Part shown: piece after piece, positions 27,108-64,000 of the stretch
Numbering within the stretch: position 1 is the first letter of the stretch
Layout of the letters: every line of letters begins with the position of its first letter
IMG/VR virus record: IMGVR_UViG_3300034117_001582
Span: 62,001-126,000 of that record
Strand: one strand, 5' to 3'
Length of the DNA: 64,000 nucleotides
Translations under genes and position numbers: made by a program
Notes under the pieces: generated by a model
Database searches by the model: none
Seen by the model: only the letters and a program-made list of their open reading frames with translations
What the model was told of the DNA's origin: nothing

Positions 27108-27773
27108 TTACAATGCGTTATCGTTTTCGTCGTAAACATTAAATGTTTTTTTAACTTCATTTGGTGAAAAATTTTCAACATCATCAGAAGTTAATACATA
27201 TTCATTTTTACCTGTCGCTTCCATCTCATCTTTTTTATCATCAAAGAAATCCGTTAATTTTTGGTTAAATGGGTAAGAATCTAATGAACGTAACATTAAT
27301 TTTTCTTCAGGAGTTTTTTCTCGGTATTTGTCAAATTTAGCTTCAAGACCACTAATCTTATCCATGATTTCGTCCATGTGTGATAATTTACTTTCTAATT
27401 CATCTAACTTAGTAAATATGCCATCCATAAACTCATCTTGTTTAGCCTGTATTTCTTGTTGTGTAGTAACAAGATCTGTGATATCGATTTCTTCTGACTC
27501 TCCTTCTCCACCTTCAGGTTCATTACCAACTTCTTCAACATCAGGGTCATTTTCTATATCAATTGGCTCTGGAATTGCATCACCTCCTGCCGGTGGTGCT
27601 CCTGCAGCGTCTGCCGGTGGTGGCACTTCACCTATAGGTGGTTCCAATCCAGGATCCGCAACCGGATCAACAGGTGCGGGTGGTGCTGGTGGTTCGGGCT
27701 GCTCATTTAAGACGTAGGTATTAATCTGATTGAATCTTTTTAATTCTTCTAATATTTTTCTATCTAAACTCAT
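27108..27773 (-). CDS. acidic Pro-rich coiled-coil protein (possible internal head or scaffold-like protein)
   Basis: N-terminal ILEELKR..VLNEQ leader, a Pro/Ala/Glu-rich disordered region and a heptad-rich middle. Confidence 0.5.
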   Translation of the reverse strand: MSLDRKILEELKRFNQINTYVLNEQPEPPAPPAPVDPVADPGLEPPIGEVPPPADAAGAPPAGGDAIPEPIDIENDPDVEEVGNEPEGGEGESEEIDITDLVTTQQEIQAKQDEFMDGIFTKLDELESKLSHMDEIMDKISGLEAKFDKYREKTPEEKLMLRSLDSYPFNQKLTDFFDDKKDEMEATGKNEYVLTSDDVENFSPNEVKKTFNVYDENDNAL

Positions 27774-27784
27774 TTTTTTAATTT

Positions 27785-28009
27785 TTAACCATTTAATAAT
27801 GTCTTAACCCCTTGCGGAGTTTCAACCTTTAACGTTCTATTTGTTTTCATAGTATTATCTACTCTTTCAATCAAACCATCTTTCATTCTGATTGTATAGC
27901 AATCGCCGGTATCTAAATCACAAACTTCTTGGTATCCGTTACCACCATCTTTTTGAGTTACACGAACATCTTTTTTAAGATAATCGTCAAGTAAATTTTT
28001 CATGTTCAT
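27785..28009 (-). CDS. small hypothetical protein
   Basis: EVCDLDTGDCY (Cys pair). The start is placed at ATG 28009, downstream of the TATTTAT at 28025-28031. Confidence 0.6.
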   Translation of the reverse strand: MNMKNLLDDYLKKDVRVTQKDGGNGYQEVCDLDTGDCYTIRMKDGLIERVDNTMKTNRTLKVETPQGVKTLLNG

Positions 28010-28038
28010 ACTTTTTATTTTTATATAAATATACGACA

Positions 28039-31000
28039 CTAAGGGTTTTGTACAAAAAACTCATAACTATCTTTAAATATCTTAACATACGCATCATACG
28101 TAGTCGCATTATTTAATAATAAATCATTTTCAACGTAATCTTTAATTTGTTGAGCGTTTAATGATGATGTTACCGCGGCAGCAGTTTTCCATGTGGTTAG
28201 GGCCAATTGGGTCAATGCTTTACCATAACTAACATTAACATCAATATTAGGATTAACATTTTTTAAATTTTGAATCATTGGGGAATAAACCTGATAATAA
28301 GAAATCATATAATTTGTTGCCGTTAATATATTTGGGAATTTAGCAATAGGTACTTTAATTCCAGATATATCAACACAAGATTGTTCGGTAATAAATGTTG
28401 CTAAATTTCCTCTTGGTGCGTTTGATGTTGTAATTTCATACAAATTATTATTAATTACGTTATATATTAGGTTATTACGTGTATTTAATGTTGATATGAT
28501 GGCAATCCCTAAAAGTAATGCCCTAATTTCCGTATTTGTTGTTGCCGAATCTATAACACTAATAATTTCATTAAGAGTATAAGTACTAGCACTTATATCT
28601 AAGAACGGAATTGTTGGGTAAGCCGACGTATCCCTACATTTTACTTCGGTTGTTGTAATAATTTTTGGGTCCTCAGTTAATAATTTCTCAGTCGGCGATT
28701 GTGCAGTAACTCCAGATTCTGGAATTACTTTTTTAATTTTTTCTTTAAATGAACTTAATATCTTCTTATTAACATTAACTAATAAATTATCAACGTTAGG
28801 TAAACTATATTTAGGTATTCTAGTACCTTTAAAATCAGTATCAAAACCACTTTCAGAAACATTATGATTTACTTCGTATATCCAATAAGGACCATAAAAC
28901 ATTGGCACATGTCTTAATACAAAATACATTGTAGGTTGTATCATAACATTCCCCATAGACTGCACACCACAAGAATACGATCTAGACTTATATACCCCAT
29001 ACATTGATGTAGATTGTTGTCCTACTTTATCTCCAGCAACAGAACTCCCTATATCAGCAAAAACTTTAAAAGATTCTGACGTATTTTTCATTTCCGACAT
29101 ATCTAAATCTAAAGTTTTAAATATACTTTGATTTTGTATACCAAAATCAACACTAAAACCAACAACTTTGTTTGTTTTTGAGTAATCTCTATTAGGGTCA
29201 GAAACCCTTAGTGGGTTATCTGGTACTCTTAAATCAAAACTATCATCACCAAATCTATTAAATGAATTTTCTTTTGGTTTAGGGTACTCTGACGGGTTAC
29301 CCATATATAAACATAAAAATTTAGGACTTGATTTTGTATAGTCAACCTCCAAATATGTACCAAAAAGCGAATTACCTACGTTGGGGTCTTCGACGGCCTT
29401 TCCGTTTTTAACCGCCTCTTGTAATCCATAAAAATTAATATATGCTGGCATTGCCATAAACATAAACTGGTTATCATCTAATATATTACTAACGGCCTGC
29501 ATTAAGTTCATATTAGGATTTTTATCCGTATCCAAACTATCAACTACTTTTTGTACGTCAACAATATAGGTATCACCAATATCACTATTAGCTCTATCCA
29601 TAAATAAAAAGTCTTCAAATAGTGTTACGGTTTTTAAATCAGAACCAGCAATCCATTTATCATTAAACCCTTTTAAAGTATTATATAAAGTTAATTTTGT
29701 GTTATCGCCATTAACCGTAACCGGTTGGGTATTTGTGGTTATTTGGATGTCTTTTAATATCTTATTTAGATTAGTGAACGTTTCACTAACAATACCATTT
29801 TGTAAGTTATACTGCGATGTTAAGTAATTGTTTATGAAAGTTGTGAATTTTGTACTATTAAAGGTAGGGTCTTTTAATTTTTGTTCTGCGTATAATCTTA
29901 TTAATGGATATGCGGTTTCAACGTTTGCTGAATTAAACGCAATGTTATTATCAATAAAGAAATCGGTTACGTATGATTTTTGAGTGTTTTGTAGTGGAGT
30001 GACATTTGGGTTGGGGTTAGTTGGTGTTGGTGTTGTTGTTTGGTTACCGCTTACTGTAGAAATGTTTGCAGACAATGTTTGATAACTTACACCGGTTACC
30101 GCATATTTAACGGTCATTATATAATTACCAGAAGTGTTACCATTAACCTCAAATACTCTCGCGTAGTTTGTATCTAAACCACTACTACCATTAAATGGTA
30201 ATGAACTATTATTAGGGTCATTTATATTACTATTTGCAGGATAAAATAGAGTACTACTAAAATTTAGTGGTTCAAAAACAGGTATTCCTGTTAATTTATA
30301 AACGGTATATCCACCACTAGGTTTAACAATATTAAAGTAGTTAATGTTATCTTGATTTGGTGTTTCAGGTAATATAACAGAACTATCACCAACAAATTCT
30401 AATTGTAGTGATGTATTTAATGGAGATTGTGAGCAATTTACATTTGTATTCCAAAAAGACATACAAAAACTTTCTGGCAAAAGGTTTCCGGTATTTCCGT
30501 CAAGATATGTATTGTCCTCAGCAACTATATTATAGTTAGTAGTTATTGCACTATCTGATACTTTTCTAGCACAGAATTTTTTATCTTGTGATGCACTATC
30601 AACAACATCCAAATACCATATATCCCCATTAGTGTAGTTTAGCGAAGAAAAATTGTTCGGGTCAGTTATATTAAAATATTGTCCTGTACATACATCTTGA
30701 AAAGTTCTAAATGTTTGTGTCGGTATTGGTGGAATATATGTGTAATTTACAAATGATGTTGAGGTCGGGATTGATGCCGCTAATGGTACGGAAGGAAAAG
30801 ATGGTTGTACTTGAGTTTGGAAGTCTAATTTTGGTATTGTAGAATACCCCAAATACTTTCTTAATGAGTCCCACGCATCTTTATTTTGTGCGACACTTTG
30901 TAGTAATGTTACAGATGTTCCGTCACCAGGTAATGTGCCTTTAATATAAGGTGAAAATTGATATTTATCGGTTGGTACAAATTGTGTTAGATTAGAAAAC

Positions 31001-34000
31001 GAATTAAATAATTTTCTATTAAAATGTCCTGGATTACCTAATTTTATTACACAATCAAAATTTAAAAACTTTTTAACTGATTCTGTAAATGAACTTATTT
31101 GTTTAGTTGCTAATGCTTTACCGTCAACGTTTTGATTAACAAAATCTATTCCTGTTTTACTCACAACAAATAATGATTTAATCTGACTAACAAGTGACTT
31201 CTCTTCTAAATTATGTAAACCTCCCGTTTGGTTATACGTTGGTGATATAATCTCATCGGTTAATGATATGTCTTTAGCCTTTGGGTTATAATTACAAAAC
31301 CCTAAAAACTTTTCTTCAAATTTATCTAACATTTCAACAGTAAAAATATTGAAAATCTCATCTATGTTTGAATAGAATGATTGTGTTGACCCTATATCAA
31401 AAGGATATTGTTCCTCAGACTCGGTGTCTATGTTTTTTACATATTGTGTTGGTGATGGTTTTTTAATTAAACTATTATCAAAATATCCAAAATGAGATGT
31501 ACCCCATAAAGACCTAACCGAACCATTATAAAGTGATTTGTTATTTAAAAGTTCCGTCTTTAAGTTATCAGTATCGTTAACACATTCAAATATTGATTGG
31601 TCTATTGGTATACCACCCATAGAAGGGTAAAGTAAAATAGACGTATTACCTTGATTAACTGAAGTTGCTGCACTGAATTCTCTATATTGATAATAGTTTT
31701 GTTTTATTAACGACCGATTAAGATTTGCAGTATCGAAACCAAAATTTAAAACCTTTGTCGATTGTCCATTAACCCCAATTCTTAATTTATTTTTTGTGTA
31801 TGCAGTTAAAAAATCAGAAGTGGTATACCCTGTAAACAAATCTTTACCAATTACAAAATTATTTACCGCGTTTATAACTTTAGGGTAAAACCCAACATTA
31901 ATAGTGTCTTTTGATTGTATTGAAGGTATTGGAAATACTTCTGTATTTTGTAGCCTTATGTTTTGTGAACCCCCTGTATAGTTAGGAATTGTATATTGTG
32001 TTGTAATTGCAGATGTTACAGGGTCATAAGAACCAGCATAGTCAAAATCTTTCCAAACACTATCTAATATATCTACCCCCGTTTCTATATATTTTTTATA
32101 TCGGTGCCAAATTGACCCATACTTTAAAACCCAAGCATACGGGACTTGGTGTATTGCTGAATATTTTTTAAATGTTGCCGCCAAATAATCTAAATCCGTA
32201 ATTGTCCCATCATTATTAATATTTTTTAATCTTTCTTTGGTGGTAATCAATGGCATGGAATTAAGATACAAATACCCTAATGGTACAAATGCATTTTTAT
32301 CTTTTGTCTTATTTAATTCAACCCCATTAATTATTGAATTAATAAAATAAGGAGTATTTAATAATGATGTTGTTTGGTATTGAGTATTAACTTGACCACT
32401 ATATGAGGTACCGTAATTAATAGACGATTCGGTTATATAATAATCTTTAATCCTCCTTTTTTTATAAAAATCAAATAAAGTTTGTCTTGTTGTTACTGAA
32501 ACGGTATTACTTTGATTAGTAATATATGGTTGTACATTATTTTTAAAAGAAAAATCATCTGTAAATAATTTGATATTCTTGTACGTTTCGGTTTCATTAA
32601 TTCTAGCAATGGTTTTTTTATCTTGTAAATAAACAAAAGTTTTAGTTGTATCATTAAATTCATCAAAAGAATTTAAAGTAAACCCATCAGACACATTTTC
32701 TTTTAACCAAGAAACATTTGTAAATGGGTAGGTATCTAATGTGTTTATTTTTGAACTATCAGTACTTTTTAGATAATCAGTTAAATTAGTGACTAATGGT
32801 TGGTCTGAAGAAACTTTTATTGATCTTGAACTTAAAGTATCAATACTATATATCTCATCTTGTACCTTTAACATATTTTCAATATACTCAGTTTTAAATA
32901 AACTTCTTAGATATGTTTGCCAACTATCACCTTGTCCGTTACTAGATATTTTTTTCATATAATCTAACAAAGTGGTTAGATTAAGTTTTAACTCTTTTAA
33001 AGTCTTATTTAATGAAATATCATCAGGAGCAATTAAACTTAAATTTTTACTTTCAATATCACCATAGAATTTATCTATTTGTTTTGGAGAAACTATCGTT
33101 GGGTCTAATTTACTGTAGTGAGCGATTATATATGCCCTCTCATAAATTTCATATAGTGTTTTTATTGCGTCTAAATCTTGATATGGTAATGTTTTAAATG
33201 GAAACTCCAAAGCATTTGCAGAAACAAACTTAGTAGTGTCTAATGGGTTTTCGTATAAATTACCTTCTTCTGGTTTTGCCTTTTCTACCACACCTTTTAA
33301 ATATGCCTCCACAAACCCTATTTCAGGCCATATTCTATAATCATACGCTCTAGTTTGATTTATAACTTTTGAGTCTCCAGGATATTGTATTGTGTATAAT
33401 TCCCTCCCATCTTTTTGTTTTTCTAATGTGAAATATAATGGCCAAGGATAAATTACATTATCTTTATTTAAGTCACCACTAGATGTTTGTAACGCCTTAA
33501 GCGCATCAGGCGAAAACGCCTTTTCAGGTGGTATAACCGACATAAGCCTAGCAACATCATCTCTAACATTCCAAGCATCTTGATGTACGTCATCCATTAA
33601 CCTATAAAATGTATCGGCGCCTGCCATAATAACCGCAAATACATTTCTTATTGTTGGTACAAATCCTAAATTTCCCGAAGCCGCTTTAGATAATAATCCC
33701 CCTAATTCTTTTTCAATTATTTCTTCATTTGTGTTTAAAGTTTTTTCCATTTGGTCCAACTTAAACAAGTAACTATTTTTTAAGTAAACACCATTGTTAA
33801 CCAATTGGTCACCAAAAACAAAATAATCCGGAATTTCTGATACCAAAACATTATTTACTAAAACTCTTTTTAGTTCATTATTTTCAGTTTCGTCTATAAC
33901 AAATTTTTGATAGTCAGCAACAATATTAGGGTCGTTTGGATTATATTGTTTACCCGTCCTAAAGTAAAAAGTATTTTGAACATTTTTTTCATTTGCAATC

Positions 34001-35334
34001 CAACTATTAAAATCTAATTTTTTAATAACCTCTTTACTGTCTTTTATTGTTACCGGTATTTGTTTTTTAGCGTCTTTTGACTTGGTTCCAAATGTCGTGT
34101 TATTTTGAAGATTTTCAACATAAGTTGCAATTCTATCTTGTGTTTTTGTTTTGTAATCTTCTTTAGATTGGTCTGAGATTTCTTTTTTAAACGGATAGTA
34201 TATTTCATTATCACCGTTTGTACTAACAACATAATAACTACTCCTATCTAAAAAATTATTTAAAGAGTTTTCGTAAACTTCTTTTTTTAATTTTGTTAAA
34301 TTTTCTCTATAATCTATAATATCATTAAGTTGTGTAAAATCACCTTTCTTATCATTTATTAATGATTCTAAAATATTTGTAACAAAATTATTTACTCGAT
34401 ATTTAAATTCATCTATTGTGATTTCATTAAAGTCTTTATCTATTAACCCCTTTCTTTTATATATTTGATAAACCTCATGTAATTTTTGTCTACCCTTATA
34501 TGTGTTTAATTGTCTAACGTTACCTGTTGTTGGGTCATTTATAGTAATCTGACTATTATACATTTTTGGAGCCGTTTGGGCATACTGTAAAGGAGTATCA
34601 AAAAGAAGGGCAGTAAATTTACCAATAAGTTTTAAACTAATATTATAGTTACCAGTATCCGCATCAAATTTAGCATTAAACGACATTAAAGATAATCTAT
34701 ATCTTATTGCCTTACCATAATAACCTTTAAGTGTTAAATAAAATAATGGGTAAGGGAAATTAAAAAATGCGGAATATAAAGAATTTTCACCTTGTTCAAA
34801 TAACGACCTACCTTGTATATCAACCATTTCAATACTAACTTCAGGAACCCCAGTTCCTTTAACATTTACCGAAATTCTTTTAATACCTAATAATTGTGTA
34901 TCTTCATAGTTAGATACACTATTTTTAAATTTAGGGTTACCATCAACACTTACTACTTGTTCTGTTTTTTGATTTAACCCTTTTTTATTTCTAGACTCTT
35001 TACCGGTTATTTGGTCTGACCAACTTGTGTCAAATTCTGTTTTACCCCCTTTTGGTTTTAAAAAATTAATCTTTAAGTCATCATCACCACCAAATACTGT
35101 AGCAATTGTGGTATTAAATACCGGTGAGTCAAAACTTTCACCAATTGCCAATTTTGTTCTTGGAATTATGAATGTTTCTAAATTTGCATAATAAACCAAA
35201 TCTTCGTGGTCAACCAATCTTGGTGCTGCACTTTTATTATCGTCAGCATACACTTCATTTGGGTTTACTAAAATTACATTATCGTAATCGGTTTCAACAA
35301 ATATTTTTTTTGAGTTTGGTATCTTACCTGCCAT
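28039..35334 (-). CDS. very large baseplate hub protein (gp27/gpD-like split domain)
   Basis: N-terminal LFYLTLKGYYG/NAKFD..GNYNISL and distal SMGNVMIQPTMYF...GPYWIYEVNH...FDTDFKG are typical of hub proteins; the gene follows tape measure, tube initiator and LysM genes. Confidence 0.6.
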   Translation of the reverse strand: MAGKIPNSKKIFVETDYDNVILVNPNEVYADDNKSAAPRLVDHEDLVYYANLETFIIPRTKLAIGESFDSPVFNTTIATVFGGDDDLKINFLKPKGGKTEFDTSWSDQITGKESRNKKGLNQKTEQVVSVDGNPKFKNSVSNYEDTQLLGIKRISVNVKGTGVPEVSIEMVDIQGRSLFEQGENSLYSAFFNFPYPLFYLTLKGYYGKAIRYRLSLMSFNAKFDADTGNYNISLKLIGKFTALLFDTPLQYAQTAPKMYNSQITINDPTTGNVRQLNTYKGRQKLHEVYQIYKRKGLIDKDFNEITIDEFKYRVNNFVTNILESLINDKKGDFTQLNDIIDYRENLTKLKKEVYENSLNNFLDRSSYYVVSTNGDNEIYYPFKKEISDQSKEDYKTKTQDRIATYVENLQNNTTFGTKSKDAKKQIPVTIKDSKEVIKKLDFNSWIANEKNVQNTFYFRTGKQYNPNDPNIVADYQKFVIDETENNELKRVLVNNVLVSEIPDYFVFGDQLVNNGVYLKNSYLFKLDQMEKTLNTNEEIIEKELGGLLSKAASGNLGFVPTIRNVFAVIMAGADTFYRLMDDVHQDAWNVRDDVARLMSVIPPEKAFSPDALKALQTSSGDLNKDNVIYPWPLYFTLEKQKDGRELYTIQYPGDSKVINQTRAYDYRIWPEIGFVEAYLKGVVEKAKPEEGNLYENPLDTTKFVSANALEFPFKTLPYQDLDAIKTLYEIYERAYIIAHYSKLDPTIVSPKQIDKFYGDIESKNLSLIAPDDISLNKTLKELKLNLTTLLDYMKKISSNGQGDSWQTYLRSLFKTEYIENMLKVQDEIYSIDTLSSRSIKVSSDQPLVTNLTDYLKSTDSSKINTLDTYPFTNVSWLKENVSDGFTLNSFDEFNDTTKTFVYLQDKKTIARINETETYKNIKLFTDDFSFKNNVQPYITNQSNTVSVTTRQTLFDFYKKRRIKDYYITESSINYGTSYSGQVNTQYQTTSLLNTPYFINSIINGVELNKTKDKNAFVPLGYLYLNSMPLITTKERLKNINNDGTITDLDYLAATFKKYSAIHQVPYAWVLKYGSIWHRYKKYIETGVDILDSVWKDFDYAGSYDPVTSAITTQYTIPNYTGGSQNIRLQNTEVFPIPSIQSKDTINVGFYPKVINAVNNFVIGKDLFTGYTTSDFLTAYTKNKLRIGVNGQSTKVLNFGFDTANLNRSLIKQNYYQYREFSAATSVNQGNTSILLYPSMGGIPIDQSIFECVNDTDNLKTELLNNKSLYNGSVRSLWGTSHFGYFDNSLIKKPSPTQYVKNIDTESEEQYPFDIGSTQSFYSNIDEIFNIFTVEMLDKFEEKFLGFCNYNPKAKDISLTDEIISPTYNQTGGLHNLEEKSLVSQIKSLFVVSKTGIDFVNQNVDGKALATKQISSFTESVKKFLNFDCVIKLGNPGHFNRKLFNSFSNLTQFVPTDKYQFSPYIKGTLPGDGTSVTLLQSVAQNKDAWDSLRKYLGYSTIPKLDFQTQVQPSFPSVPLAASIPTSTSFVNYTYIPPIPTQTFRTFQDVCTGQYFNITDPNNFSSLNYTNGDIWYLDVVDSASQDKKFCARKVSDSAITTNYNIVAEDNTYLDGNTGNLLPESFCMSFWNTNVNCSQSPLNTSLQLEFVGDSSVILPETPNQDNINYFNIVKPSGGYTVYKLTGIPVFEPLNFSSTLFYPANSNINDPNNSSLPFNGSSGLDTNYARVFEVNGNTSGNYIMTVKYAVTGVSYQTLSANISTVSGNQTTTPTPTNPNPNVTPLQNTQKSYVTDFFIDNNIAFNSANVETAYPLIRLYAEQKLKDPTFNSTKFTTFINNYLTSQYNLQNGIVSETFTNLNKILKDIQITTNTQPVTVNGDNTKLTLYNTLKGFNDKWIAGSDLKTVTLFEDFLFMDRANSDIGDTYIVDVQKVVDSLDTDKNPNMNLMQAVSNILDDNQFMFMAMPAYINFYGLQEAVKNGKAVEDPNVGNSLFGTYLEVDYTKSSPKFLCLYMGNPSEYPKPKENSFNRFGDDSFDLRVPDNPLRVSDPNRDYSKTNKVVGFSVDFGIQNQSIFKTLDLDMSEMKNTSESFKVFADIGSSVAGDKVGQQSTSMYGVYKSRSYSCGVQSMGNVMIQPTMYFVLRHVPMFYGPYWIYEVNHNVSESGFDTDFKGTRIPKYSLPNVDNLLVNVNKKILSSFKEKIKKVIPESGVTAQSPTEKLLTEDPKIITTTEVKCRDTSAYPTIPFLDISASTYTLNEIISVIDSATTNTEIRALLLGIAIISTLNTRNNLIYNVINNNLYEITTSNAPRGNLATFITEQSCVDISGIKVPIAKFPNILTATNYMISYYQVYSPMIQNLKNVNPNIDVNVSYGKALTQLALTTWKTAAAVTSSLNAQQIKDYVENDLLLNNATTYDAYVKIFKDSYEFFVQNP

Positions 35335-35641
35335 AATAAAAAATATGTGTATCTAGTGCAGATTTGTAGTCTTGCAATGCAGCAACTAGCGGAAATGGTA
35401 TAATTAATATAGTTCCGTCAGGTATATTTTGTTCTAAACCACCAAAAATCGGATTAGAAGCCAAAATTAACCAACTAAAGTATGGTGTTCCATATTTTTC
35501 ATAACTCACCTTATCAAGTCTACTTTGATTAACTCTATAGACATATCTTTGGTCTGTGGCTCTTTGTGGTAGTTTTAAAAACGGTACCACTGTAGGAGAA
35601 CCATTAATTAAAAAATCACCATATCTATTATAATAATTCAT
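35324..35641 (-). CDS. LysM-fold baseplate protein (T4 gp53 / tail X-like)
   Basis: RLDKVSYEKYG....WLILASNP......IPDGTILIIP. Confidence 0.8.
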   Translation of the reverse strand: MNYYNRYGDFLINGSPTVVPFLKLPQRATDQRYVYRVNQSRLDKVSYEKYGTPYFSWLILASNPIFGGLEQNIPDGTILIIPFPLVAALQDYKSALDTHIFYYGR

Positions 35642-38600
35642 TATGTGAATGTTTTTTTCAAATTAAATTTATCACCCGAAGAGTTAGAATCTGAATAAAT
35701 TTTCTTTAAATCCTCATCATACGGAGCGGTTGAAGTTAAAATTATTTCATAAGTCATTATTCTTTTTTTAGATGTGAAAGTTGTTTTATAAGTATTAAAG
35801 TTATTCTTAAAGTAATCGTCTTTAAATTTCTTAAAATGTTTGTCTGTTTCTGTTTTTGAATTTTTATAGTTTTTAACAAGTTCTTCATTCACGTTTTTAG
35901 ATAAAAAATCAAACCATTTCTTTTTATCCTCATCGTTAGCGTTTGGTAATCCATTATCCACACACCCTTGTACAAATTTAGTTGGGTCATCAATTATTTC
36001 TTTTCCAAATAACATAAAGAATCTATTATAACTTGGTACTCCATTAGTGTTACTATCATTAAAATAACTATCAAAAGTAAAACTATCATTATATTCTGTA
36101 TTACCAGATGGTATTATATTATTTGTTAATTCATTATAAAACTTACCAATATCATTTTTAATTTCTTCTGAGTCCGCAAGTAGTTCCTGTAGAGTATTAG
36201 TAACCGTCGCTTTGTTTGGTGGGGTAATTTGGGTTGTTCCTGATATATTATACACTATAACCTTACCTTTATTTGTTATGTATCCGTCATGAGCATTACT
36301 GACATAATTAATTTTATCTATAATGTTAATTAATTTAAGTTCTTCGTTAGATATTTGTGTTGAGTAATTGTTCAATTCCCCAATTAATAGTGGCGACTTA
36401 TTATCAATTAATGTTTGTATGTGTTTTTTAATTTTTCTTTTTTGTGGATTCGCTAAGTCTTCAAGTTCTAAACCATCTAATAAAGGACAAGTATTATCAT
36501 CAACATCTTTGTTAGCCAATTTCACTAAATTTTCAACTTTTTCTTGTGTTTTGGACGATTTACCAAATATCTTAACATTATCTGTAGTTCCGACACCAAT
36601 ATAACCATCAACATATTTTTTATCTTTTGTAAATATTTGTAAACCACCAAGTAAAAATTCATTATTAATTTTTTCAAGCGTATCTATTGTTGTTGTTAAA
36701 CTAGATTTAGTACTATCAATTAATTGTTTCATTATATCTGTATAACTAATAGTTCCAGAAACTAAATTAAGATTATTAGCGTCCAAATTAGTTGTAATGG
36801 GAACACCAATAGGAACACCACCATTTGTCGTGTTTTCCCTATTATCATCAGACTCAATTACACCAACTTCATTTTTAATAGATTCAAATAATTCAGCATC
36901 ATATTGTGACGTAACATCTTCAGTTGATTCCGCCCTTTCATCATACATTTCAGTATTTGCGTAATAATTAAACGATAACGCGTTTTGTAATGAGGCAATA
37001 GGTCCGGCTAACCCGTGTCCACCAATAAAATTAAAACCAAGTTTAACATCAGCAATCATCGGTTGTACTCCAATACCTTCAGGATTTAAATCAAATCTAC
37101 CGTCTTCATATCCAATACTTAAAGAGTCTATCACAATTTTAGTATGGAAAAAGTCTCCAACCCTTAGAACACATATAGGAGGAGCACCAAACACACTATT
37201 AGTTACATCATTATATATCAACTTAGTATTATTACCATCCATAGAAACCGTAGGGATAGTATCACCAGGTCTCATACATTGTTGTAAAAATGTTAACCTT
37301 GCATTCAAACCTTCAGGTGTGATTGAGTGGAACACAGGATGGAAGTGTTTAATTTTACTTTTTATGCCATCATATATCATTGGATTCTCTCTTTTAACCA
37401 TCTCAAAATAATTACACTCTGTGAGTAATTTTCTCGCCAACCTTTTAGTTAAGTCCGCCCTTCTTTTAGGTGCCACCTTACCGGCCGGTGGTTTTGTTAA
37501 TGAAGAACTTGGTGGATCAATATTGGTTTCGGTTTTTCCTGTTTGTGCTTGATTAACAAATGCTGGAGTTTCTGTTACAGTGTTTACAGGTTTGGTTTCT
37601 ACTCCGGAAGAGTTATTTTGTGGTGCCGGATCTATAGCACTAGTAGTACCATCATTATTTGTTGGTGATGTTTCTGTTGTGACTGTTGTTGTTGGTGTTG
37701 CGGTGTTATTATTACTGATGAAAGTTTTAATAATTCTCGCTCTACGACATGCCATAGCGTTTACCGATACAGTACCCTCATTACTATTACTTACATAATT
37801 TTTATTACAATTAATTGCAGAATATGTCTCTTCAATTAAAGGCCCACCTTCTCCAGTGGCCTTTGTAGTAATAATTAATTTTTTATTAGCACCCGTAGTA
37901 AAGTCTACAAGTTTTTTTCCATTTGGAGTTACTTGTTTAAAAATCCATTGCATAACCGAATCAATTCTCCTTTTTGATAAATTAATATTATATGCTTCAT
38001 CAGTAATCGCCGACGCAGACCCCAAAAGGTCAAAAGAAACCGTTTCTCCAGCATCTAACGCTTCTGATATTTTTTTAATGAACCTTTTTGCTTCTTCAAA
38101 CTCACTATTAATAAACGTAAAGAACTCATCTACCTTAACTATTCTTGTATCAACATATGCATCTAAATATTTAATTTTTAACTCAGAACTTCCACTTAAA
38201 ACAAAATTTGTGTAATCAACATATCCTGCGTCACCATATTTAATTATTTTATTTCTTGCCTTACCAAAATTTCTAGTACCATCACTACCACCCGTAGTTA
38301 AATATTTAGTTTTTAATTCTTTATATTTTGTTAACCAAAAATTATAGTCATTTGACGCTGTAACCCTATTGTCATTTGGGTCAGGAAAATCATTATGGAA
38401 ATAGAACCCAACCTCAGGAAATTGGTCATCAATTGGTGCTTCAGTGGTCTCAGGCGGAGTTGAGGTTACTGTTGGTGGTGTCGAACAAGGGGTTGTTGTG
38501 TTTGTTACTGTATTTGTTGCGTCCGGTGTTGTAAAGCTAGGTGTTGTCGTACTTTTAACACAAATGGTTGTTGCTGTTGACGTTAACCCAGTTAATGTAA

Positions 38601-41600
38601 CAAGAGTTCCCGAACAATCGGTGTACGATATATCTGTCGTTACCAAACCAACATTAATTTTCCATTCAGTACATGGTGCTGACTCCGTTGTGGTAATTGT
38701 TGGAGCAGTAAATGTTTCCACTTCCTGTTCAACAATGTTATTAGGTAACGTTTCTGTAAATGTTTCCACATCTTCAGGAGTATTTAAAAGTTGAACCTCA
38801 TATACGTCATTTGGGGTAAACATCGGGAATTTCTTAACTAAATCGTATAAATCATATTTAGTACATCCGGCAAAAAATGAATCAATAACTTGATTTATAG
38901 TCTCATTTGATGATTCGTTTTCTAATTCTTTATTAACTAATACATTCATAATTGATGGGTGATCAACAATTACTTTAAAACTTATATTACCTTTTCTTGA
39001 TGTATTTGAATATGTATATATTGGTTCGGGTCTACCTAAAAATGTATTATCTTTCCAACTAGTATTTATACTTTCATCAAAAGTTAAATCATAAGGTGGA
39101 AACCACATTATACGACCACCATTTGGTCCTTTTTCACAATCAGGTAAATCTTCATATGTATAACCAGGCCTGTTCGATGTTCTCCAAGAAAGATTTTCTA
39201 AAGAAAGCATATATTTTTTAACCTTACCATTTTTAATATTGGTAGAGTCGACACCACCCATTGGTGCAATATTTAAATTAAATGTACTATCTAAAACTGA
39301 ATTTGTATATTTTCTAATATTTCCGTCAGGTTTTTGTAATTCATCAAACGTGTAATAAGGTCTATCTTTTGTGAATACTCGACAATATTCAAGACCTTCG
39401 ACCGCACCACCTGGTACAGAATTTTTTGTAGTATAACGTATTACCCTTGAACCTTTTGTTAATTCTTGATACCCGTCGTTAAATACTTTAGATACTTGAT
39501 TGATTGCATTACCAACATGTTCTAATTTGTTTGGTGATTGATTACCAGCATCTACTAATTTTTGAGTAACATCTAAAATAGACCCTGGTGTAAATTCATA
39601 TTTTGTTGATTGACTTGGGTCGTATCCACTTGATATTCTATCAAAATTAAAATCAGATTCGTCAGTAAAATCAACTCCACCTCTACCTTGTAATTTACCA
39701 GGTAAGGTATAGTTTTTACTACCCTTACCCATTTTAGACACCCAAGTTAATCCACCAACAATATTAACAGATGCCCATGTACTTGTGTCTTTAGCCCCTG
39801 AACTATAAAAGTTTCGTGTATTTAAACCAAATAAGGACCCGGTTAATTGGTCACTTTCATAAAGTTTACCAACATTACCATAAGACAATACAGGACCATT
39901 ACTTGACCCACTTCCATCTTTATTTAATGGTAATTGTTCAAATGGTGAAATCGATTCTGTTATTGAATTTTTTCTATCACCAACATAGAACACCCCCTTA
40001 GGTGCCAATAAATTATTACCAATTTTATAGTTAGGTCTATAAGGGTTATATCTTATTTGGTCATATAAAAGACTTCTTGTCGCCACAGACGTATATTCAA
40101 CCAATAACTCAGAAGACGATTGATTTGCTGGTTGTAAGACACTAAATAACGCCCCCAACGCACCACCAACTAAAGATAGTGGATTTTTAAATGGACCATT
40201 ACCTTTACTATTAGGATAATCAAAATACTCACCAGGGATATACGAGTAAGGAGAATATGTTCCGGCAAGTTTAGCGGCAAAATTAATTGCTTGACCTAAA
40301 AATAAATCGGGGTTAGTTATTGAATAGTTTCTTGCAATTATTGGAATGTTCCCTGTTAGTAAACCAATAGCGTTAAACGGGTCTAAATTAGGTTTTGCTG
40401 AAACCTCACCAGTATCGGGGTTTACATTAGAATTTAGTAAATTAACCCTACCTAACGTTTGTTGTAGAAGTTCTAATGCAACCCTATGTTTAAATTCTTT
40501 TTGTAATTGTTTAGCCCCTAAAGCGGCCAATTGTGAATCTTGAGAAAGACTACCATCAGAACCATTAGGATTATCACTTAATAATATGTTTACTGGCGTA
40601 TAGGTAGAAGGAATAAAAACAAAAGTTGAATCTGAATTTGCGTATGGTAAACCTGTCGTTGTATATTGAATATCCTTAATGGTTAAAACCTCATAGTCAC
40701 CATTACCTGTTACATATTTGTTTTTAACATATGCCTCAGTTTCTTTTACACCACCCACAAACTCCAATTCATTTTGATTGGTATCGGTAACGTCGTAATT
40801 ACCTTGATTAATAGTTAAATTTTTAAGTTTTCTATATGGGTCAACTTCTTCACTACTTTGATTACCTTCAGGTCCCCAAGGATTTTGTAAAAATGTTGGT
40901 TTTCTTTCGTCAACACCAACCACTTCTAACTCACTACTAACAGTATCGGGGTACCCATATTCACCCTCATTAGATTTTGTTTGTAAATTTCTATTAATTG
41001 GTGCTTCTCCCTTAATAGGGTTATCGGGACCATACTGATTTGACGCAATTAATATTGGTCTATCTGCTTTACCTTCAAACTCTAAATCACTACCGATAGT
41101 ATCAGAGTAATCGTAGTTTCCTGAACCAATAATAAGATTTTTTTGTATTCTGTAAGGTTCAACCTCAAAAACACTTTGTCCACCTTCAGGACGATACTGA
41201 TTATTAGTAAATAATGTTGGCCTAATACTAACACCTTTAAGTTCTAATTCATCACCAATAGTATCACCATAATCGTATTCACCTTGATTTGAACCAAGTA
41301 TTAAATCATTATTAATACTATATTTTGTATCACCATATTGATTTGAATTTTCTGGTGAATATTTGTTTTTTGTTATTAATACCGCTTCTTGAGTATTACC
41401 AACTTGTTCTAACTCACTATTATCCGTATAAGTAATACCATATCCAAAAATTTGACGGAAACTTGATGGTAAAGTTAAAACATCATTGATTTCATATTTT
41501 GTATCACCAAATCCACCAAAAGTACCACTACTTGGTTTGTATTTGTTTAATACTTTGTGTTCGACCTCACTATTATTACCTATTTGAAATAAATTACTAT

Positions 41601-45695: not shown

Positions 45696-46571
45696 TTAAA
45701 CTTCTTTTTTATTACCTCCTTTAGTTAAATATGTTTTAACTGGATTTTTTTCATACTCTTTTTCTAAAAATCCTTTCATCTTTTCTATATTTCTTTCATC
45801 ATCATCTGAAAATCCAATTATAGGTTCAATTTCATTATTTACTATATCATTCTTGAAAAAAGCTTTTTCCCCAATTTCTTGAGCCATTTCTTTACAATAA
45901 CCAATAAAGTTTCTCATCGCTTTAATTTTTCCTTCTTCAGGATTTGAAGCATCTCCGTCACCAAAAGTAACAGGTTCAAAACGACACAAATTCAAATATT
46001 CATTTAATTCGTTCTTTGTAAGGGTTGTGATGGTTTTACCGTCTACATTAACATCACCACCTAAATTACGATACCTTTTAAGATTAGTCGATAATGTCTT
46101 ACTATTAATACCTAAATGATTACCCATAATAAGATTATATACCGCTTCTCTTAACGTCTTTGGGTTGTGTCCTCTAGCCGTAATGATTGCAAATATTGAG
46201 CCCCCGTTAATACACTCTACAAAATCGTTCCATGAAGGTCCTGGTTGAGCTAACATAGAGTCTAACACAAATCTCTTATCACCTTCTGACCTGAAGTTTC
46301 TAAATGGATTAGGTGCAAAATCTACAATAGCGGTCCCCTTATAATTAAAGGGTTCTTTACCTATCTGTTGCCTGTGTTCAGCAAAGTCTTCAGTAGACAT
46401 TGGGACCTCATCGTCTTTATCAGACAATAAAATAATTGAGGTAGGCATAAATAAAATATTATCATCCCAATCGAATGCATAATATTTTGTATCAGGTCTA
46501 CCCTCATCTGTGAAACCTTCATTTAAATTAGTCTTATTAAGATAATTAAAAACGTGTTTTCTAATGTTCAT
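45696..46571 (-). CDS. HAD-superfamily phosphatase
   Basis: Motif I AFDWDDNI, motif II IITARG, motif III Lys (EEGKIK) and motif IV FSDDDERN. Confidence 0.7.
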   Translation of the reverse strand: MNIRKHVFNYLNKTNLNEGFTDEGRPDTKYYAFDWDDNILFMPTSIILLSDKDDEVPMSTEDFAEHRQQIGKEPFNYKGTAIVDFAPNPFRNFRSEGDKRFVLDSMLAQPGPSWNDFVECINGGSIFAIITARGHNPKTLREAVYNLIMGNHLGINSKTLSTNLKRYRNLGGDVNVDGKTITTLTKNELNEYLNLCRFEPVTFGDGDASNPEEGKIKAMRNFIGYCKEMAQEIGEKAFFKNDIVNNEIEPIIGFSDDDERNIEKMKGFLEKEYEKNPVKTYLTKGGNKKEV

Positions 46572-46708
46572 TACTTTTTAAGTTTTTCTAATAATTTTTC
46601 TAACTGAGCCTCAGTAATGATAATGTTTTGTTTTTTATTAGAAAACGTTTTTTTACCTTGTTGGGTATACCCTAAAGATTCTTTGATTAATTTTTTTTCA
46701 ATTTTCAT
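46571..46708 (-). CDS. 45-aa basic protein (not in the ORF track)
   Basis: MKIEKKLIKESLGYTQQGKKTFSNKKQNIIITEAQLEKLLEKLKK*; TATTTAT lies 14 nt upstream and a TAATG overlap couples it to the HAD gene. Confidence 0.7.
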   Translation of the reverse strand: MKIEKKLIKESLGYTQQGKKTFSNKKQNIIITEAQLEKLLEKLKK

Positions 46709-46734
46709 GGTTTTCTTTTTCTATAAATATATAA

Positions 46735-53841: not shown

Positions 53842-53853
53842 TATTTATATGTT

Positions 53854-54588
53854 ATGGAAGTTAAATATGTAGGGGGCAAACCAACAAAACACAAGTCTTT
53901 TCAAGAAAGAATTAATTCAATAGAACTTAAATTAAACCTTGAGTCAACATCCAAAAAAAATATTATAAGTGAGATTAAAAAAATAAGTATAGATAAACTA
54001 CCTTATGAATACGATTCGTTAAGTAGTTTTATTGATAGTGAAACTATGGAAACTCACTACAAAAAACACTACAAGACGTATGTTGAAAAATTAAATGTTG
54101 AATTAGAAAAGGTTAAAGGTCCTGATTTGGAATTGGAAGAAATAATTGAAAAAATTTCAAAATTCAATCAGGTTGTTAAAAATAATGGTGGTGGGGCTTT
54201 TAATCACGCATTATTTTGGAAAATGATGTCACCAAAAAAACAAACACTAAAGGATCCGTTACTTTCAAAAATAAAAAAAGAATTTGGGTCTTTTGAAAAA
54301 TTTAAAGAAAAATTTGAAGAAGAAGGTAAATTAAGATTTGGTTCAGGATGGGTTTGGTTAATTTTAACTAAAAATAATAGATTAAAAATTATAACAACAG
54401 CAAACCAAGATAACCCATTAATGAATACAGAAAAAGAAAATGGATATCCATTATTAGGTTTGGATGTATGGGAACACGCATACTATCTTAAATATAAAAA
54501 CAAAAGAGACGAATACATTAGAAATTTTTGGAAAGTCGTTAATTGGGACTTTGTTACTGAAACATTTGTTTCCCAATCCAAAAAATAA
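53854..54588 (+). CDS. sodA: superoxide dismutase, Mn-type signature, with a ~40-aa N-terminal extension
   Basis: LPYEY, H...[30 protein letters not shown] and DVWEHAYY. Confidence 0.93.
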
Positions 54589-55750: not shown

Positions 55751-55754
55751 TTTT

Positions 55755-58909: not shown

Positions 58910-58970
58910 ATTTATATTTTTTAGTTTTGGGTTATTATGCTCACAAATGATTTGTGATTTCCCTTACCTA

Positions 58971-59000: not shown

Positions 59001-59350
59001 ATGATATTGATATAAAGATTTTCTGCGATTGGGGATACTAACTCACCCTCTTCCAACTGAACTAAAAATTGACCTACGAACCTTCCTTTCTTATTTGTGT
59101 CTTTTTGTACCCATTTATAGTAGATATAATATTCTCTTGGTGAATCAAAATTTCTTCTATATTTTTCTGTAAGGTAGGCCTCTTTCATAAATATTTTTTG
59201 AATACCGTCATCCTCACAAACCATAGAAAATCTTAAAGTTGCATTATCTAAAATACTATAAAAATCTTTACCTGCGTCCGTTTTACCATCAAGAATCACA
59301 TCCATTTTAATTATTGGTAATGTTGAGTTTTGTTGTATAAAAAATTCCAT
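58997..59350 (-). CDS. BppU-like Ig-fold baseplate/fibre adaptor
   Basis: F.IQQNSTLP.I...ATLRFSM...YYKW...DT...GRF.GQF. Confidence 0.55.
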   Translation of the reverse strand: MEFFIQQNSTLPIIKMDVILDGKTDAGKDFYSILDNATLRFSMVCEDDGIQKIFMKEAYLTEKYRRNFDSPREYYIYYKWVQKDTNKKGRFVGQFLVQLEEGELVSPIAENLYINII

Positions 59351-59360
59351 TTAAATTAAT

Positions 59361-60086: not shown

Positions 60087-60110
60087 GTTTTTATTATATA
60101 AATATAAAGT

Positions 60111-62045: not shown

Positions 62046-62096
62046 TCTTTTTTTAGATAAATACTTTATATGAAGGTATTTATAGGTAAAGCCTGC

Positions 62097-62846
62097 ATGA
62101 AAACATATAAATATTCAACAAAAGAAAGAGCGGAAAGGGTTTCTAAAACTTTGGGATGTTCGGGTTCTCACTATCACAATGAGGATGGCGATAGAAAATA
62201 TATGCCATGTAAGTCTCACAACATATTCTTATCTAAAACTAAAAAAAATAAAAAAGGGGAAGAACAAGAAGTCACCGAACTTGTTGATGCGGATGGTACG
62301 TGGTTATCATCGAATACCCCAATATTAGATCCGGCAAGTACGGGTGTGGGCACAAAAACTATGGACCAAATCATACCGGCAGCAAGAAATCCAAGAGACC
62401 CGTTGATGAGAGGGTGGTACGGTTATTATGGTGAAGGTCGTGTTAAAGAAGAAGACATGTCTAAAGCATTTGGATATAAGAATACAAAAAATATGGACGC
62501 TAAAGAAACTCTTGATTACTTCAAAGATGAATTAGAAATGGATGATGAATCCGCCGAACACAGAGTTGAGGATGAATTTGGTAAAAGTCCCGAAAGAGAT
62601 AAAAAATCTAAATTTAAAAACAAAAAAGGATTTGTTGGAAGACCAATACTTAAAGAAAAAGAAAGTGAAGATATTGCCGAAGACGTATTAGTTGATAAAG
62701 AAACAAACGACCAAGAAAATATTAAGAAAAGAGTATTAGATATTAATCCACTTTTAGTTAGAAATATTAAGTCAATTAAAAAAATGGCAAAAGAAAATGG
62801 AATAACCGTTAGGGAATTAATAATGATGTTAAAAGATGAACAGTAA
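62097..62846 (+). CDS. hypothetical protein with an N-terminal DUF3721-like Cys/His motif
   Basis: YSTKERAERVSKTLGCSGSHYH...YMPCKSH. The start is placed at ATG 62097, after TATTTAT at 62077-62083. Confidence 0.55.
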   Translation: MKTYKYSTKERAERVSKTLGCSGSHYHNEDGDRKYMPCKSHNIFLSKTKKNKKGEEQEVTELVDADGTWLSSNTPILDPASTGVGTKTMDQIIPAARNPRDPLMRGWYGYYGEGRVKEEDMSKAFGYKNTKNMDAKETLDYFKDELEMDDESAEHRVEDEFGKSPERDKKSKFKNKKGFVGRPILKEKESEDIAEDVLVDKETNDQENIKKRVLDINPLLVRNIKSIKKMAKENGITVRELIMMLKDEQ

Positions 62847-63288
62847 TCTATACGATAGAATTGCAATCATACCGGATTCATTGGTTAAACACTTAAATGA
62901 TTGTTTTGGATCAACTGAAGGTGATAATAATGTTGAGGGTTATAAAAGAAACCAAGATTTAAGAAAATCAAGAAAGGCAACATACCAACAAATTAAAAGA
63001 ATTAAAAGTTGGTTTGATAGTTATGGTGGAAATAAAGAAGACGCTCCATTTATATTAAATGGTGGTGATAGAATGCAACAATGGTGTGATGAGGTTTTAA
63101 GGGTTTGGAGAGACAACGATTTAAGTGGAAAAAAATTAAAAATGGATACAGGAATGCAAAACCAATTTTTAGATTCACACGAAAAAAATAGTTTTAACTT
63201 AAACGATAAACACGGAACAACCGTAGATGATTTAAAAGTTAACGAGGATGTTAATAAAATTAATAAACTAATGAAAAAAATAATATAA
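62836..63288 (+). CDS. hypothetical protein
   Basis: 150-aa ORF with GYKRNQDL...IKRIKSWF...ILNGG...W, overlapping the upstream gene. Confidence 0.55.
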   Translation: MNSNLYDRIAIIPDSLVKHLNDCFGSTEGDNNVEGYKRNQDLRKSRKATYQQIKRIKSWFDSYGGNKEDAPFILNGGDRMQQWCDEVLRVWRDNDLSGKKLKMDTGMQNQFLDSHEKNSFNLNDKHGTTVDDLKVNEDVNKINKLMKKII

Positions 63289-63582
63289 ATGGCAAATCAA
63301 TCAGACAAGTTAGATTTTTCACAACCTGATAATGCGTTATCACAAATTGCTGAAGAACAAAGAAAAAAACTTTTCCCAAGAAATGACTTTAAACCTACTG
63401 ACCCATATTCGTCTGTTCATCCTGATGCAATTGCAAATGGTGATAAGATTGGTAGAGGAACTGGTGGTGACTTAGATATTTATAACCAACAAGCGGGAAC
63501 ATCAACAGACATTACAGAAAGAAAAGACGATTTAAAAGTTAATAAATTCTCATCTAATAACCCATACTACACGGTAACATGA
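63289..63582 (+). CDS. hypothetical protein
   Basis: 97-aa ORF abutting the previous stop, with an ATGA overlap to the next gene. Confidence 0.55.
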   Translation: MANQSDKLDFSQPDNALSQIAEEQRKKLFPRNDFKPTDPYSSVHPDAIANGDKIGRGTGGDLDIYNQQAGTSTDITERKDDLKVNKFSSNNPYYTVT

Positions 63583-64000
63583 AACTAGTTAGGAGTTTAA
63601 GTAAAGTAATTACTGAAGTGGCAGCTTTAGATAATGTTCAAAGTAGCATTAAACAAAAGAATATTATCACGATTAATTATGATGGTGACGAGTACGGTAA
63701 AGGTTATCGTGACGTTGAGCCAGTTTGCTTAGGAATTAGTAAAGCCGGTAATATGGTTTTAAGGGCTTGGGAAAGACAAGGGTCTTCACACTCTAATAAG
63801 GTTGATGGTAACCCAATTCCAGGATGGAGACTTTTTAGATTAGATAAAATATTGACTTATGCTTTACAAGGTGATAGTTTTACAGAAGTTAGACCTAAAT
63901 ATAACCCTAACGGTGATAGGTCAATGGAAAGAGTTATTTTAAATGCCGTATTTGATTACACACCAAATACAGATGACATAGAAAATATCGATAATATAGA
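63579..64000 (+). CDS. stand-alone WYL-domain protein (runs off the window; not in the ORF track)
   Basis: My translation: MKLVRSLSKVITEVA...ITINYDG...GYRDVEPVCLG...MVLRAW...GWRLFRLDKI, matching the WYL signature R.VEP..L....L.A....WR.FRLD.I. Confidence 0.8.
   Translation, partial: MKLVRSLSKVITEVAALDNVQSSIKQKNIITINYDGDEYGKGYRDVEPVCLGISKAGNMVLRAWERQGSSHSNKVDGNPIPGWRLFRLDKILTYALQGDSFTEVRPKYNPNGDRSMERVILNAVFDYTPNTDDIENIDNI

What the first reader, a model, noticed from the sequence alone, without database searches (positions are those of the whole stretch)
27108..63620. (I/L/V)-x-E-ending leaders on SOD, HAD, WYL and small proteins: a possible capsid-targeting cargo system
Seen: otherwise recognisable proteins carry short extra leaders ending in an aliphatic-x-Glu just before the core. 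Examples are SOD ...KKNIISE|[14 protein letters not shown] ...NKTNLNE|GF, WYL MKLVRSLSKVITE|VA, the 221-aa protein ...ILEELKR..YVLNE|Q, the 45-aa protein KKLIKE|...IIITE|, and the 150-aa protein's C-terminal LKVNE|DVNKINKLM. All lie in TATTTAT-led units. Known: T4 internal proteins have an N-terminal capsid-targeting sequence that gp21 protease removes after (I/L)-x-E. Inference: this phage packages and injects enzymes (an antioxidant SOD, a phosphatase and a WYL nucleic-acid binder) to act at the start of infection.
Basis: inference. Interest (0 to 1): 0.62.

Follow-up and report, generated by a model that had tools for sequence, protein, structure and literature searches.

The report
N-terminal leader tags in a huge phage

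Summary
The window lies in a 291,867-bp T4-like huge phage of Bacteroidetes from the bS21 clade. It encodes a gp21-type (Peptidase_S77) prohead protease.

The tripeptide itself is uninformative: 43% of all proteins in this genome carry [ILV]-x-E in their first 25 residues, and 62% in their first 45.

The idea behind the finding is supported by much stronger evidence, nearly all of it outside the window:
- Five classes of conserved N-terminal leaders sit on about 65 of 353 proteins, and the bodies behind them are unrelated.
- The leaders are conserved at the protein level, not the codon level.
- Each leader holds about two [IL]-x-E sites, and Glu is among the best-kept residues.
- This matches the site predicted in the phage's own capsid protein (I-N-E|A, aligned with T4 gp23 L-T-E|A).
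- One class alone matches 7,929 unannotated protein clusters in metagenomes.

Inside the window:
- The 221-aa protein (borderline, E=0.04) and the 45-aa ORF (E=7e-5) resemble leader classes.
- The HAD-like protein, SOD and WYL each have an [ILV]-x-E kept in all relatives compared, but they belong to no leader class.
- The SOD "leader" is what remains of a larger N-terminal region.
- The 150-aa example is best put down to chance.

Capsid targeting remains an inference. Nothing here shows cleavage or packaging.

The parts
27108..27773 (-). 221-aa protein. It has a conserved 25-residue leader (codons at 27699-27773) ending in V-L-N-E-Q, then a hypervariable Pro/Ala-rich linker, an acidic stretch and a conserved helical C-terminal domain. 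It is the best leader candidate in the window.
   Evidence: Translation. It hits the class E leader HMM weakly (E=0.04, residues 6-17). 193 relatives were found. In the 25-sequence alignment the leader is nearly invariant up to E24-Q25, and length-variable low-complexity sequence follows at once.
46571..46708 (-). 45-aa ORF made almost only of leader-like modules: L-I-K-E at residues 7-10 and a class-B-like stretch at residues 29-44. Its stop overlaps the start of the HAD-like gene (TAATG).
   Evidence: Class B HMM hit, E=7e-5, residues 29-44. It is conserved and coupled to the HAD-like gene in nearly all relatives examined. The junction sequence is and a TATTTAT lies at 46723-46729.
45696..46571 (-). 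HAD-like phosphatase of 291 aa with an 18-residue N-terminal helix (codons at 46518-46571) ending in L-N-E|G-F.
   Evidence: No Pfam or PHROG hit. The invariant D34-x-D36, T131, K215 and D256-D257 fit HAD motifs I-IV. The AF2 model has pLDDT 79, and its best fold matches are HAD phosphatases (Ceg4, probability 0.92, E=0.008; also Lem4 and MDP-1). Residues 1-16 form a helix with pLDDT below 50. E18-G19 is invariant while residues 2-17 vary. A few relatives hit leader class A weakly (E=0.003-0.4).
53854..54588 (+). Fe/Mn superoxide dismutase of 244 aa with a 40-residue N-terminal extension (53854-53973) ending in I-I-S-E|I-K-K. A TATTTAT lies at 53842-53848.
   Evidence: Pfam Sod_Fe_N 6.8e-24 and Sod_Fe_C 1.4e-41, starting at residue 46. 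The usual metal-ligand positions H68, H118, D204 and H208 (assigned from general knowledge of Fe/Mn SODs) are invariant. 525 relatives were found. Most are 360 aa long, with an extra N-terminal HEWxHE domain; the window copy keeps only that domain's first 12 residues plus the conserved pre-SOD segment. In the AF2 model residues 1-13 are disordered, and helices 16-26 and 32-45 have pLDDT 60-75.
63579..64000 (+). WYL-domain protein (144 aa, ends at 64013 just outside the window) with a 13-residue N-terminal segment ending in V-I-T-E.
   Evidence: Pfam WYL, E=1e-4, 22.6 bits against a cut-off of 21.8, from residue 16. 40 relatives were found; the I-x-E at residues 11-13 is kept in all full-length ones. 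No leader-class hit.
62836..63288 (+). 150-aa protein. Its quoted motif is C-terminal (K-V-N-E), and I put it down to chance.
   Evidence: No leader-class hit at E<1, no Pfam or PHROG family, and the motif base rate is high.
53842..53848 (+). One copy of the TATTTAT promoter-like motif, here 12 nt before the SOD start codon.
   Evidence: The motif is 8.7-fold enriched upstream of genes, peaks at -11/-12 and around -20, and is present before the scaffold-position gene, protease, sheath, tube and bS21 genes and before 32 of 58 leader genes.

Best explanation
The phage marks a large, varied set of proteins with short N-terminal leader peptides. There are five sequence classes, 20-25 residues long and apparently amphipathic.

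The most likely mechanism, by analogy with T4, has three steps, all inferred:
1. The leader binds the scaffolding core while the prohead is built, so the attached protein is enclosed.
2. The gp21-type protease cuts after Glu in the [IL]-x-E sites within and at the end of the leader.
3. The freed cargo stays with the DNA and enters the host cell at infection.

What is shown:
- The leaders exist, are modular, and are under selection at the protein level.
- They carry conserved [IL]-x-E sites.
- The protease gene is present.
- The phage's own capsid protein has a matching site.

Within the window, the 221-aa protein and the 45-aa ORF are the likeliest members of this system. The HAD-like protein is a possible member. 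SOD and WYL have conserved [IL]-x-E sites of unknown meaning.
For: - N-terminal 30-aa segments give 478 all-against-all BLAST hits, against 10 for internal 30-aa segments. Four classes of 19, 16, 15 and 7 members have almost no similarity in their bodies (1/171, 3/120, 0/105 and 1/21 pairs). A fifth class has 8 members.
- HMMs separate members (E below 1e-4) cleanly from the rest.
- At conserved residues, codon identity is 0.56-0.66, against 0.49-0.57 expected from random synonymous choice. Selection therefore acts mainly on the peptide.
- The 65 leaders hold 129 [ILV]-x-E sites against 58 expected from composition (z=11.7). In class C, R6 and E9 are invariant and E22 is kept in at least 90% of members.
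- An S77 protease is present in a T4-like head module. Capsid protein residue E60 (I-N-E|A) aligns with T4 gp23 L-T-E|A and gp24 L-R-E|S. Five of the capsid protein's nine sites lie in its first 60 residues.
- T4 precedent: gp21 cuts after L/I-x-E, and 10-19-residue propeptides target the internal proteins into the head (PMC9026906). T4 IPI ends in I-T-E|A.
- Leader genes share the TATTTAT motif with head and tail genes, 32 of 58 against about 26% of other genes, often as a terminator-plus-promoter cassette.
- Bodies are diverse: pterin dehydratase, lysozyme, LysM, PAP2, GNAT, DnaJ zinc finger.
- Class C occurs in 4 of 4 related contigs, and 3 of those 4 carry the S77 protease. An unrelated 130-kb contig carries sequences resembling all five classes, judged by eye. 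G001 carries all five by HMM.
Against: - There is no direct evidence of cleavage or packaging. The phage is uncultured.
- 65 cargo species in five signal classes is far beyond any known case.
- Some carriers are large (up to 1031 aa) and could be tail or baseplate parts with a shared anchor.
- Some proteins carry a second, internal leader copy.
- The leaders have no sequence similarity to the T4 targeting sequence.
- [ILV]-x-E sites are not depleted in the cargo bodies (O/E 1.03 against 1.12 in other proteins, not significant).
- The cultured relatives immuto and Mel-JY01 have the protease type but lack class C.
Confidence: 0.45

Rival explanations
1. The leaders are docking or oligomerisation helices for some other common partner, and are never cleaved. 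Candidates are the phage's Clp-type ATPase, a chaperone, a tail or baseplate hub, or one another.
For: The leaders look amphipathic (class C alignment; my reading, not computed). A Clp-type ATPase gene sits beside the head module. Large class E carriers lie next to a 2919-aa ORF. Internal second copies exist. The 45-aa ORF is leader-like with no cargo body.
Against: This does not explain why the Glu of [IL]-x-E is among the best-conserved residues, why conservation stops exactly at that Glu in the 221-aa family, or why the sites match the capsid protein's predicted site.
Confidence: 0.25
2. For SOD, HAD-like and WYL specifically, the N-terminal segments are ordinary structural parts of each protein family, and their aliphatic-x-Glu is incidental. 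These enzymes act in the infected cell and are not packaged.
For: The motif base rate is 43-62%. None of the three hits a leader class. The SOD segment is an internal linker in most relatives, and its I-I-S-E lies inside a predicted helix that runs into the SOD fold. In the HAD-like protein, E18-G19 begins a highly conserved block that leads into the catalytic motif. The SOD gene lies between a SNF2 helicase gene and a neck protein gene, with the DNA polymerase gene close by.
Against: P3 and P1 are invariant while P2 varies in all three families. The HAD-like N-terminal helix is modelled with low confidence. All three lie in TATTTAT-led units shared with virion genes.
Confidence: 0.55
3. The conserved 5' ends are nucleic-acid features, either translation-initiation signals (perhaps tied to the phage's bS21) or recombination cassettes, and not peptide signals.
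For: TATTTAT often lies only 11-12 nt before the ATG, which suggests near-leaderless mRNAs. The phage encodes bS21 (PMC9723584).
Against: Synonymous sites are close to randomised at conserved residues. Conservation runs over 22-25 codons. Metagenomic relatives share the peptide.
Confidence: 0.03
4. The leaders are export or membrane-targeting signals.
For: An amphipathic, basic N-terminus could bind membranes.
Against: The leaders have no hydrophobic core. The genome has separate, ordinary Bacteroidetes-type signal peptides that form their own cluster.
Confidence: 0.05

Closest known systems
[quoted passage not shown]
   Same: Both are short N-terminal leaders shared by otherwise unrelated proteins and ending in L/I-x-E. 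Both occur in a phage with an S77 protease and a gp23-type capsid protein cleaved at an aligned site. The first site lies 7-10 residues in, as in T4.
   Different: There is no sequence similarity to the T4 leader. Here there are five classes rather than one, about 65 carriers rather than three to five, and leaders of 20-25 residues with two sites. Carriers include enzymes and proteins of up to 1031 aa. The function is untested.
Propeptides of inner-body and ejection proteins of phiKZ and SPN3US, cut by gp175/gp245
   Same: These too are huge myoviruses with dozens of head proteins. Their propeptides are cut after Glu at a three-residue motif, with several redundant sites per propeptide (PMC9026906; abstracts of PMC7411985 and PMC10052503).
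   Different: From my own knowledge, not tested here: the motif there has a small residue at P3 (S/A/G-x-E), the carriers are paralogue families rather than unrelated bodies, and the phage lineage is different.
Encapsulin cargo-loading peptides (recalled from general knowledge, not tested here)
   Same: A short terminal peptide is enough to load diverse enzymes into an HK97-fold shell.
   Different: These are usually C-terminal, are not cleaved, and bind the shell rather than a scaffold.
Virion-packaged Cu/Zn SOD of Megavirus chilensis (recalled from memory, not checked here)
   Same: A viral SOD carried in the particle.
   Different: It is a eukaryotic giant virus, the SOD is of another family, and no leader-plus-protease logic is known.

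Membership tests
T4-type capsid-targeting propeptide system | The genome encodes a gp21-type (Peptidase_S77) prohead protease | tested here: met
   PF03420, E=5.5e-26, at genome 154931-155350 (-). PHROG head maturation protease, 7.8e-43.
T4-type capsid-targeting propeptide system | The same leader is shared by proteins with unrelated mature parts | tested here: met
   478 N-terminal BLAST hits against 10 internal ones; body similarity in 5 of 417 within-class pairs.
T4-type capsid-targeting propeptide system | The leader ends in, or contains, L/I-x-E | tested here: met
   129 sites in 65 leaders against 58 expected. E9 is invariant and E22 is kept in at least 90% of class C.
T4-type capsid-targeting propeptide system | Sequence similarity to the T4 IP leader | tested here: not met
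   None of the five class HMMs hits T4 IPI, IPII or IPIII.
T4-type capsid-targeting propeptide system | The leader is removed by the protease and the protein is found in the virion | not testable with these tools
   The phage is uncultured and no proteomic data are held. The one complex prediction gave no verdict.
   SOD, HAD-like, WYL and the 150-aa protein show no hit with E<1. The 221-aa protein hits class E at E=0.04, which is borderline. The 45-aa ORF hits class B at E=7e-5, but internally.
Fe/Mn superoxide dismutase | Both Pfam domains and the metal ligands are present | tested here: met
   Sod_Fe_N 6.8e-24 and Sod_Fe_C 1.4e-41. H68, H118, D204 and H208 are invariant.
HAD phosphatase | Rossmann-like HAD fold with motifs I-IV | tested here: inconclusive
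   No Pfam hit. The invariant DxD, T, K and DD fit the motifs. The best fold matches are HAD phosphatases, but only at E=0.008 and TM 0.33-0.42.
WYL domain | Pfam WYL above the gathering score | tested here: met
   22.6 bits against a cut-off of 21.8, E=1e-4. This is marginal.

The most novel reading that the evidence does not exclude
Huge T4-like phages of Bacteroidetes use a code of several short N-terminal cargo-loading peptides, each removed by the head protease, to pack dozens of different enzymes and small proteins into the capsid and deliver them with the DNA. If so, the leaders are a sequence tag that picks out injected phage proteins, among them possible anti-defence factors, directly from metagenomes. 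One class alone matches about 8,000 protein clusters.
Probability: 0.4. Interest if true: 0.8.

Novelty: new variant of a known kind. Interest (0 to 1): 0.62.

Why it matters
Proteins injected together with phage DNA act first in an infection, and in T4 they include a restriction inhibitor and an RNA-polymerase modifier. For uncultured phages they are almost impossible to recognise from sequence.

If these leaders are capsid tickets, they would give a simple sequence rule for listing the injected proteins of a widespread clade of huge freshwater and marine phages. They would also supply short portable tags for loading foreign proteins into large capsids.

Even if they are not, five conserved 22-residue modules shared by thousands of unannotated proteins, and absent from Pfam and PHROGs, deserve a name and an experiment.

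Tried and rejected
- Complex prediction of a class C leader (40 aa) with the scaffold-position protein and the protease gave no verdict (score 0.00). It counts neither for nor against binding.
- tblastn of a class C leader and of a natural two-leader protein against 50,697 deposited phage genomes found nothing. The low-complexity filter may have contributed.
- megablast of 12 kb of the window against the same collection found nothing.
- A PDB sequence search with the HAD-like protein gave only spurious ABCB1 matches.
- A literature search for the motif strings found nothing relevant. A broad search was uninformative. None of the 21 papers that use the term "capsid targeting sequence" appears, from its title and abstract, to describe such families.
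- Depletion of [ILV]-x-E in cargo bodies was slight and not significant.
- Turnover test: only 14 of 64 leader-protein bodies have a homologue in relative G001, against 135 of 253 other proteins (p=5e-6). G001 is 75% complete and breaks off inside leader-rich regions, so I do not rely on this result.
- The RNA-level or DNA-level explanation of leader conservation was rejected by the codon analysis.
- One family scan was wasted on a reference that was too short.
Full report
**What the window is.** The window is bases 62001-126000 of a 291,867-bp virus record that CheckV rates 99% complete. GC content is about 0.32 and no tRNA genes were found.

It is a T4-like myovirus:
- Inside the window are a tail tube, a baseplate hub, a sheath, a neck adaptor and a baseplate wedge gene.
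- The head module lies outside the window at genome 151-161 kb. It holds the capsid protein, a 516-aa ORF in the scaffold position, an S77 protease, the portal and the large terminase.
- A bS21 gene lies on the opposite strand inside that module. This is the hallmark of the huge Bacteroidetes phages described in PMC9723584.
- The nearest cultured relatives by capsid protein share only 40-44% identity: Flavobacterium phage immuto and Microcystis phage Mel-JY01.

**The observation.** All six quoted N- or C-terminal strings are present, and each lies in a unit led by TATTTAT. That heptamer is 8.7-fold enriched upstream of genes, peaks 11-12 and about 20 nt before the start codon, and precedes the scaffold-position, protease, sheath, tube and bS21 genes.

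The tripeptide carries no information in this Ile/Leu/Glu-rich proteome. It occurs once per 59 residues. 43% of proteins have one in their first 25 residues and 62% in their first 45.

**What turned up instead.** Listing every N-terminus with the motif showed dozens of near-identical protein starts.
- An all-against-all BLAST of the first 30 residues gave 478 hits, against 10 for an internal 30-residue control. It resolved four leader classes of 19, 16, 15 and 7 proteins whose bodies are almost never similar. A fifth class of 8 was added by HMM.
- Class HMMs separate members from non-members by many orders of magnitude. A six-frame search found a sixteenth class C copy.
- About 65 of 353 predicted proteins carry a leader. 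Nearly all lie outside the window, at genome 10-22, 53, 169-172 and 190-276 kb.
- At conserved residues, codon identity is close to what random synonymous choice would give. The peptide is therefore what is mainly conserved, not the RNA or DNA.
- The leaders hold 129 [ILV]-x-E sites against 58 expected. In class C, R6 and E9 are the only invariant residues, and E22 is kept in at least 90% of members.
- The bodies are diverse: pterin-4a-carbinolamine dehydratase, lysozyme, LysM, PAP2, GNAT, a DnaJ-type zinc finger, Ig-like domains. No Pfam or PHROG family covers any leader.

**Spread.**
- A profile of the class C leader alone matched 7,929 clusters (at 50% identity) out of 1.84 billion proteins. 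Of these, 272 score below 1e-10, and nearly all matches start at residue 1.
- The sources call every one of the ten clusters I looked up hypothetical.
- The sampled hits share only the leader. Some carry two copies.
- Four of four related IMG/VR contigs carry class C, and three of those four show the S77 protease.
- An unrelated 130-kb metagenomic contig carries sequences resembling all five classes, judged by eye, partly in tandem arrays.
- A relative that is 75% complete has 17 leader proteins across all five classes.
- Immuto, Mel-JY01 and one 595-kb uncultured phage lack class C.

**Link to the protease.**
- Aligning the capsid protein with T4 gp23 and gp24 puts its E60 (H-L-I-N-E|A) on the T4 cleavage sites L-T-E|A and L-R-E|S.
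- Five of the capsid protein's nine [ILV]-x-E sites fall in the first 60 residues.
- T4 gp21 cuts after L/I-x-E, and 10-19-residue propeptides target the internal proteins to the core (PMC9026906). T4 IPI ends in I-T-E|A and IPII/III in I-A-E|A.
- The leader classes have no sequence similarity to the T4 leaders. The resemblance is one of logic, not homology.

- *221-aa protein.* This is the best case. It has a 25-residue leader that is nearly invariant in 25 relatives and ends at E24-Q25. A Pro/Ala-rich linker of variable length follows, then a conserved C-terminal domain. Its match to class E is borderline (E=0.04).
- *45-aa ORF.* This is a real gene, conserved in nearly all relatives examined, coupled to the HAD-like gene through TAATG, and containing a class-B-like stretch.
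- *HAD-like protein.* It has HAD-type invariant residues and weak HAD fold matches. Its first 16 residues form a low-confidence helix, and [LIV]-x-E-G is invariant in the 24 aligned sequences while the residues before it vary. A few relatives touch class A.
- *SOD.* It looks intact. Most of its 525 relatives carry an extra N-terminal domain of about 120 residues with an HExxH motif. Its nearest look-alikes are stand-alone viral proteins, a few of them Peptidase_M78. The window copy has lost that domain in frame. What stays in every form, long or short, is a 30-residue segment ending in [IL]-I-x-E just before the SOD fold. The model places this motif inside a helix of modest confidence.
- *WYL.* It keeps I-x-E at residues 11-13 in all full-length relatives, and nothing else links it to the leader system.
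- *150-aa protein.* Its motif is C-terminal and unsupported.

**Verdict.** The leader families are real (confidence about 0.95). That they are capsid-targeting propeptides cut by the head protease is the best-fitting mechanism (about 0.45). It rests on analogy, on co-occurrence, and on conservation of the predicted P3 and P1 residues. That SOD, the HAD-like enzyme and WYL are packaged cargo is possible but less likely than not (about 0.25).

Noticed in passing
outside the window: genome 156088-156282 (+), i.e. L007:10088-10282: A 64-aa ribosomal protein bS21 gene lies on the opposite strand inside the head module. This places the phage in the bS21 huge-phage clade predicted to infect Bacteroidetes (PMC9723584). 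The identification is by eye from the sequence and its context.
   Followed up: partly
window 53854-53973 and relatives L017-L095: In most of 525 relatives the SOD is fused to an N-terminal domain of about 120 aa with an HEWxHE motif. Its look-alikes are stand-alone viral proteins, some of them Peptidase_M78. The domain has been lost in frame several times with different breakpoints, but the 30-residue pre-SOD segment is always kept.
   Followed up: partly
window 46571-46708 (-): A 45-aa gene is conserved in nearly all relatives examined and overlaps the HAD-like start (TAATG). It consists of two leader-like modules with no cargo body. It may be an adaptor or a decoy for the leader system.
   Followed up: partly
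genome-wide; for example window 53842-53848: In 31 genes TATTTAT begins only 11-12 nt before the ATG. If it is a -10-like element, many mRNAs would be leaderless or nearly so. That is notable in a phage that brings its own bS21.
   Followed up: no
window 28039-35334 (-) and 35641-42087 (-): Two giant ORFs of 2431 and 2148 aa sit in the tail/baseplate region and have no PHROG match.
   Followed up: partly
window 62070-62846 (+): In the DUF3721 protein, a TATTTAT at 62077-62083 lies inside the listed start. The true start is probably the Met at 62097, which gives 249 aa.
   Followed up: no
outside the window: genome 244713-246308 (-); also metagenomic proteins P0012-P0020: Some proteins carry a second, internal copy of a leader. 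In some clusters the same modules also occur as separate short ORFs. These may be natural fusions, or polyproteins that are cut apart.
   Followed up: no
window 63160-63288 and 63500-63582 (+): The adjacent 150-aa and 97-aa proteins share a D-D-L-K-V-N stretch near their C-termini. This may be a local duplication.
   Followed up: no
outside the window: genome 3263-3493, 38637-39068, 282147-282740, 287640-289550: Four proteins have Bacteroidetes-style signal peptides (K-K-L-L-L...F-S-Q or F-A-Q), which fits the predicted host phylum.
   Followed up: no
outside the window: genome 226-235 kb: Many leader genes are separate cassettes, each made of a GGGGTTTTTT terminator-like run, a TATTTAT, and then the gene. 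The layout recalls the variable internal-protein locus of T4-type phages (that comparison is from my own knowledge).
   Followed up: partly
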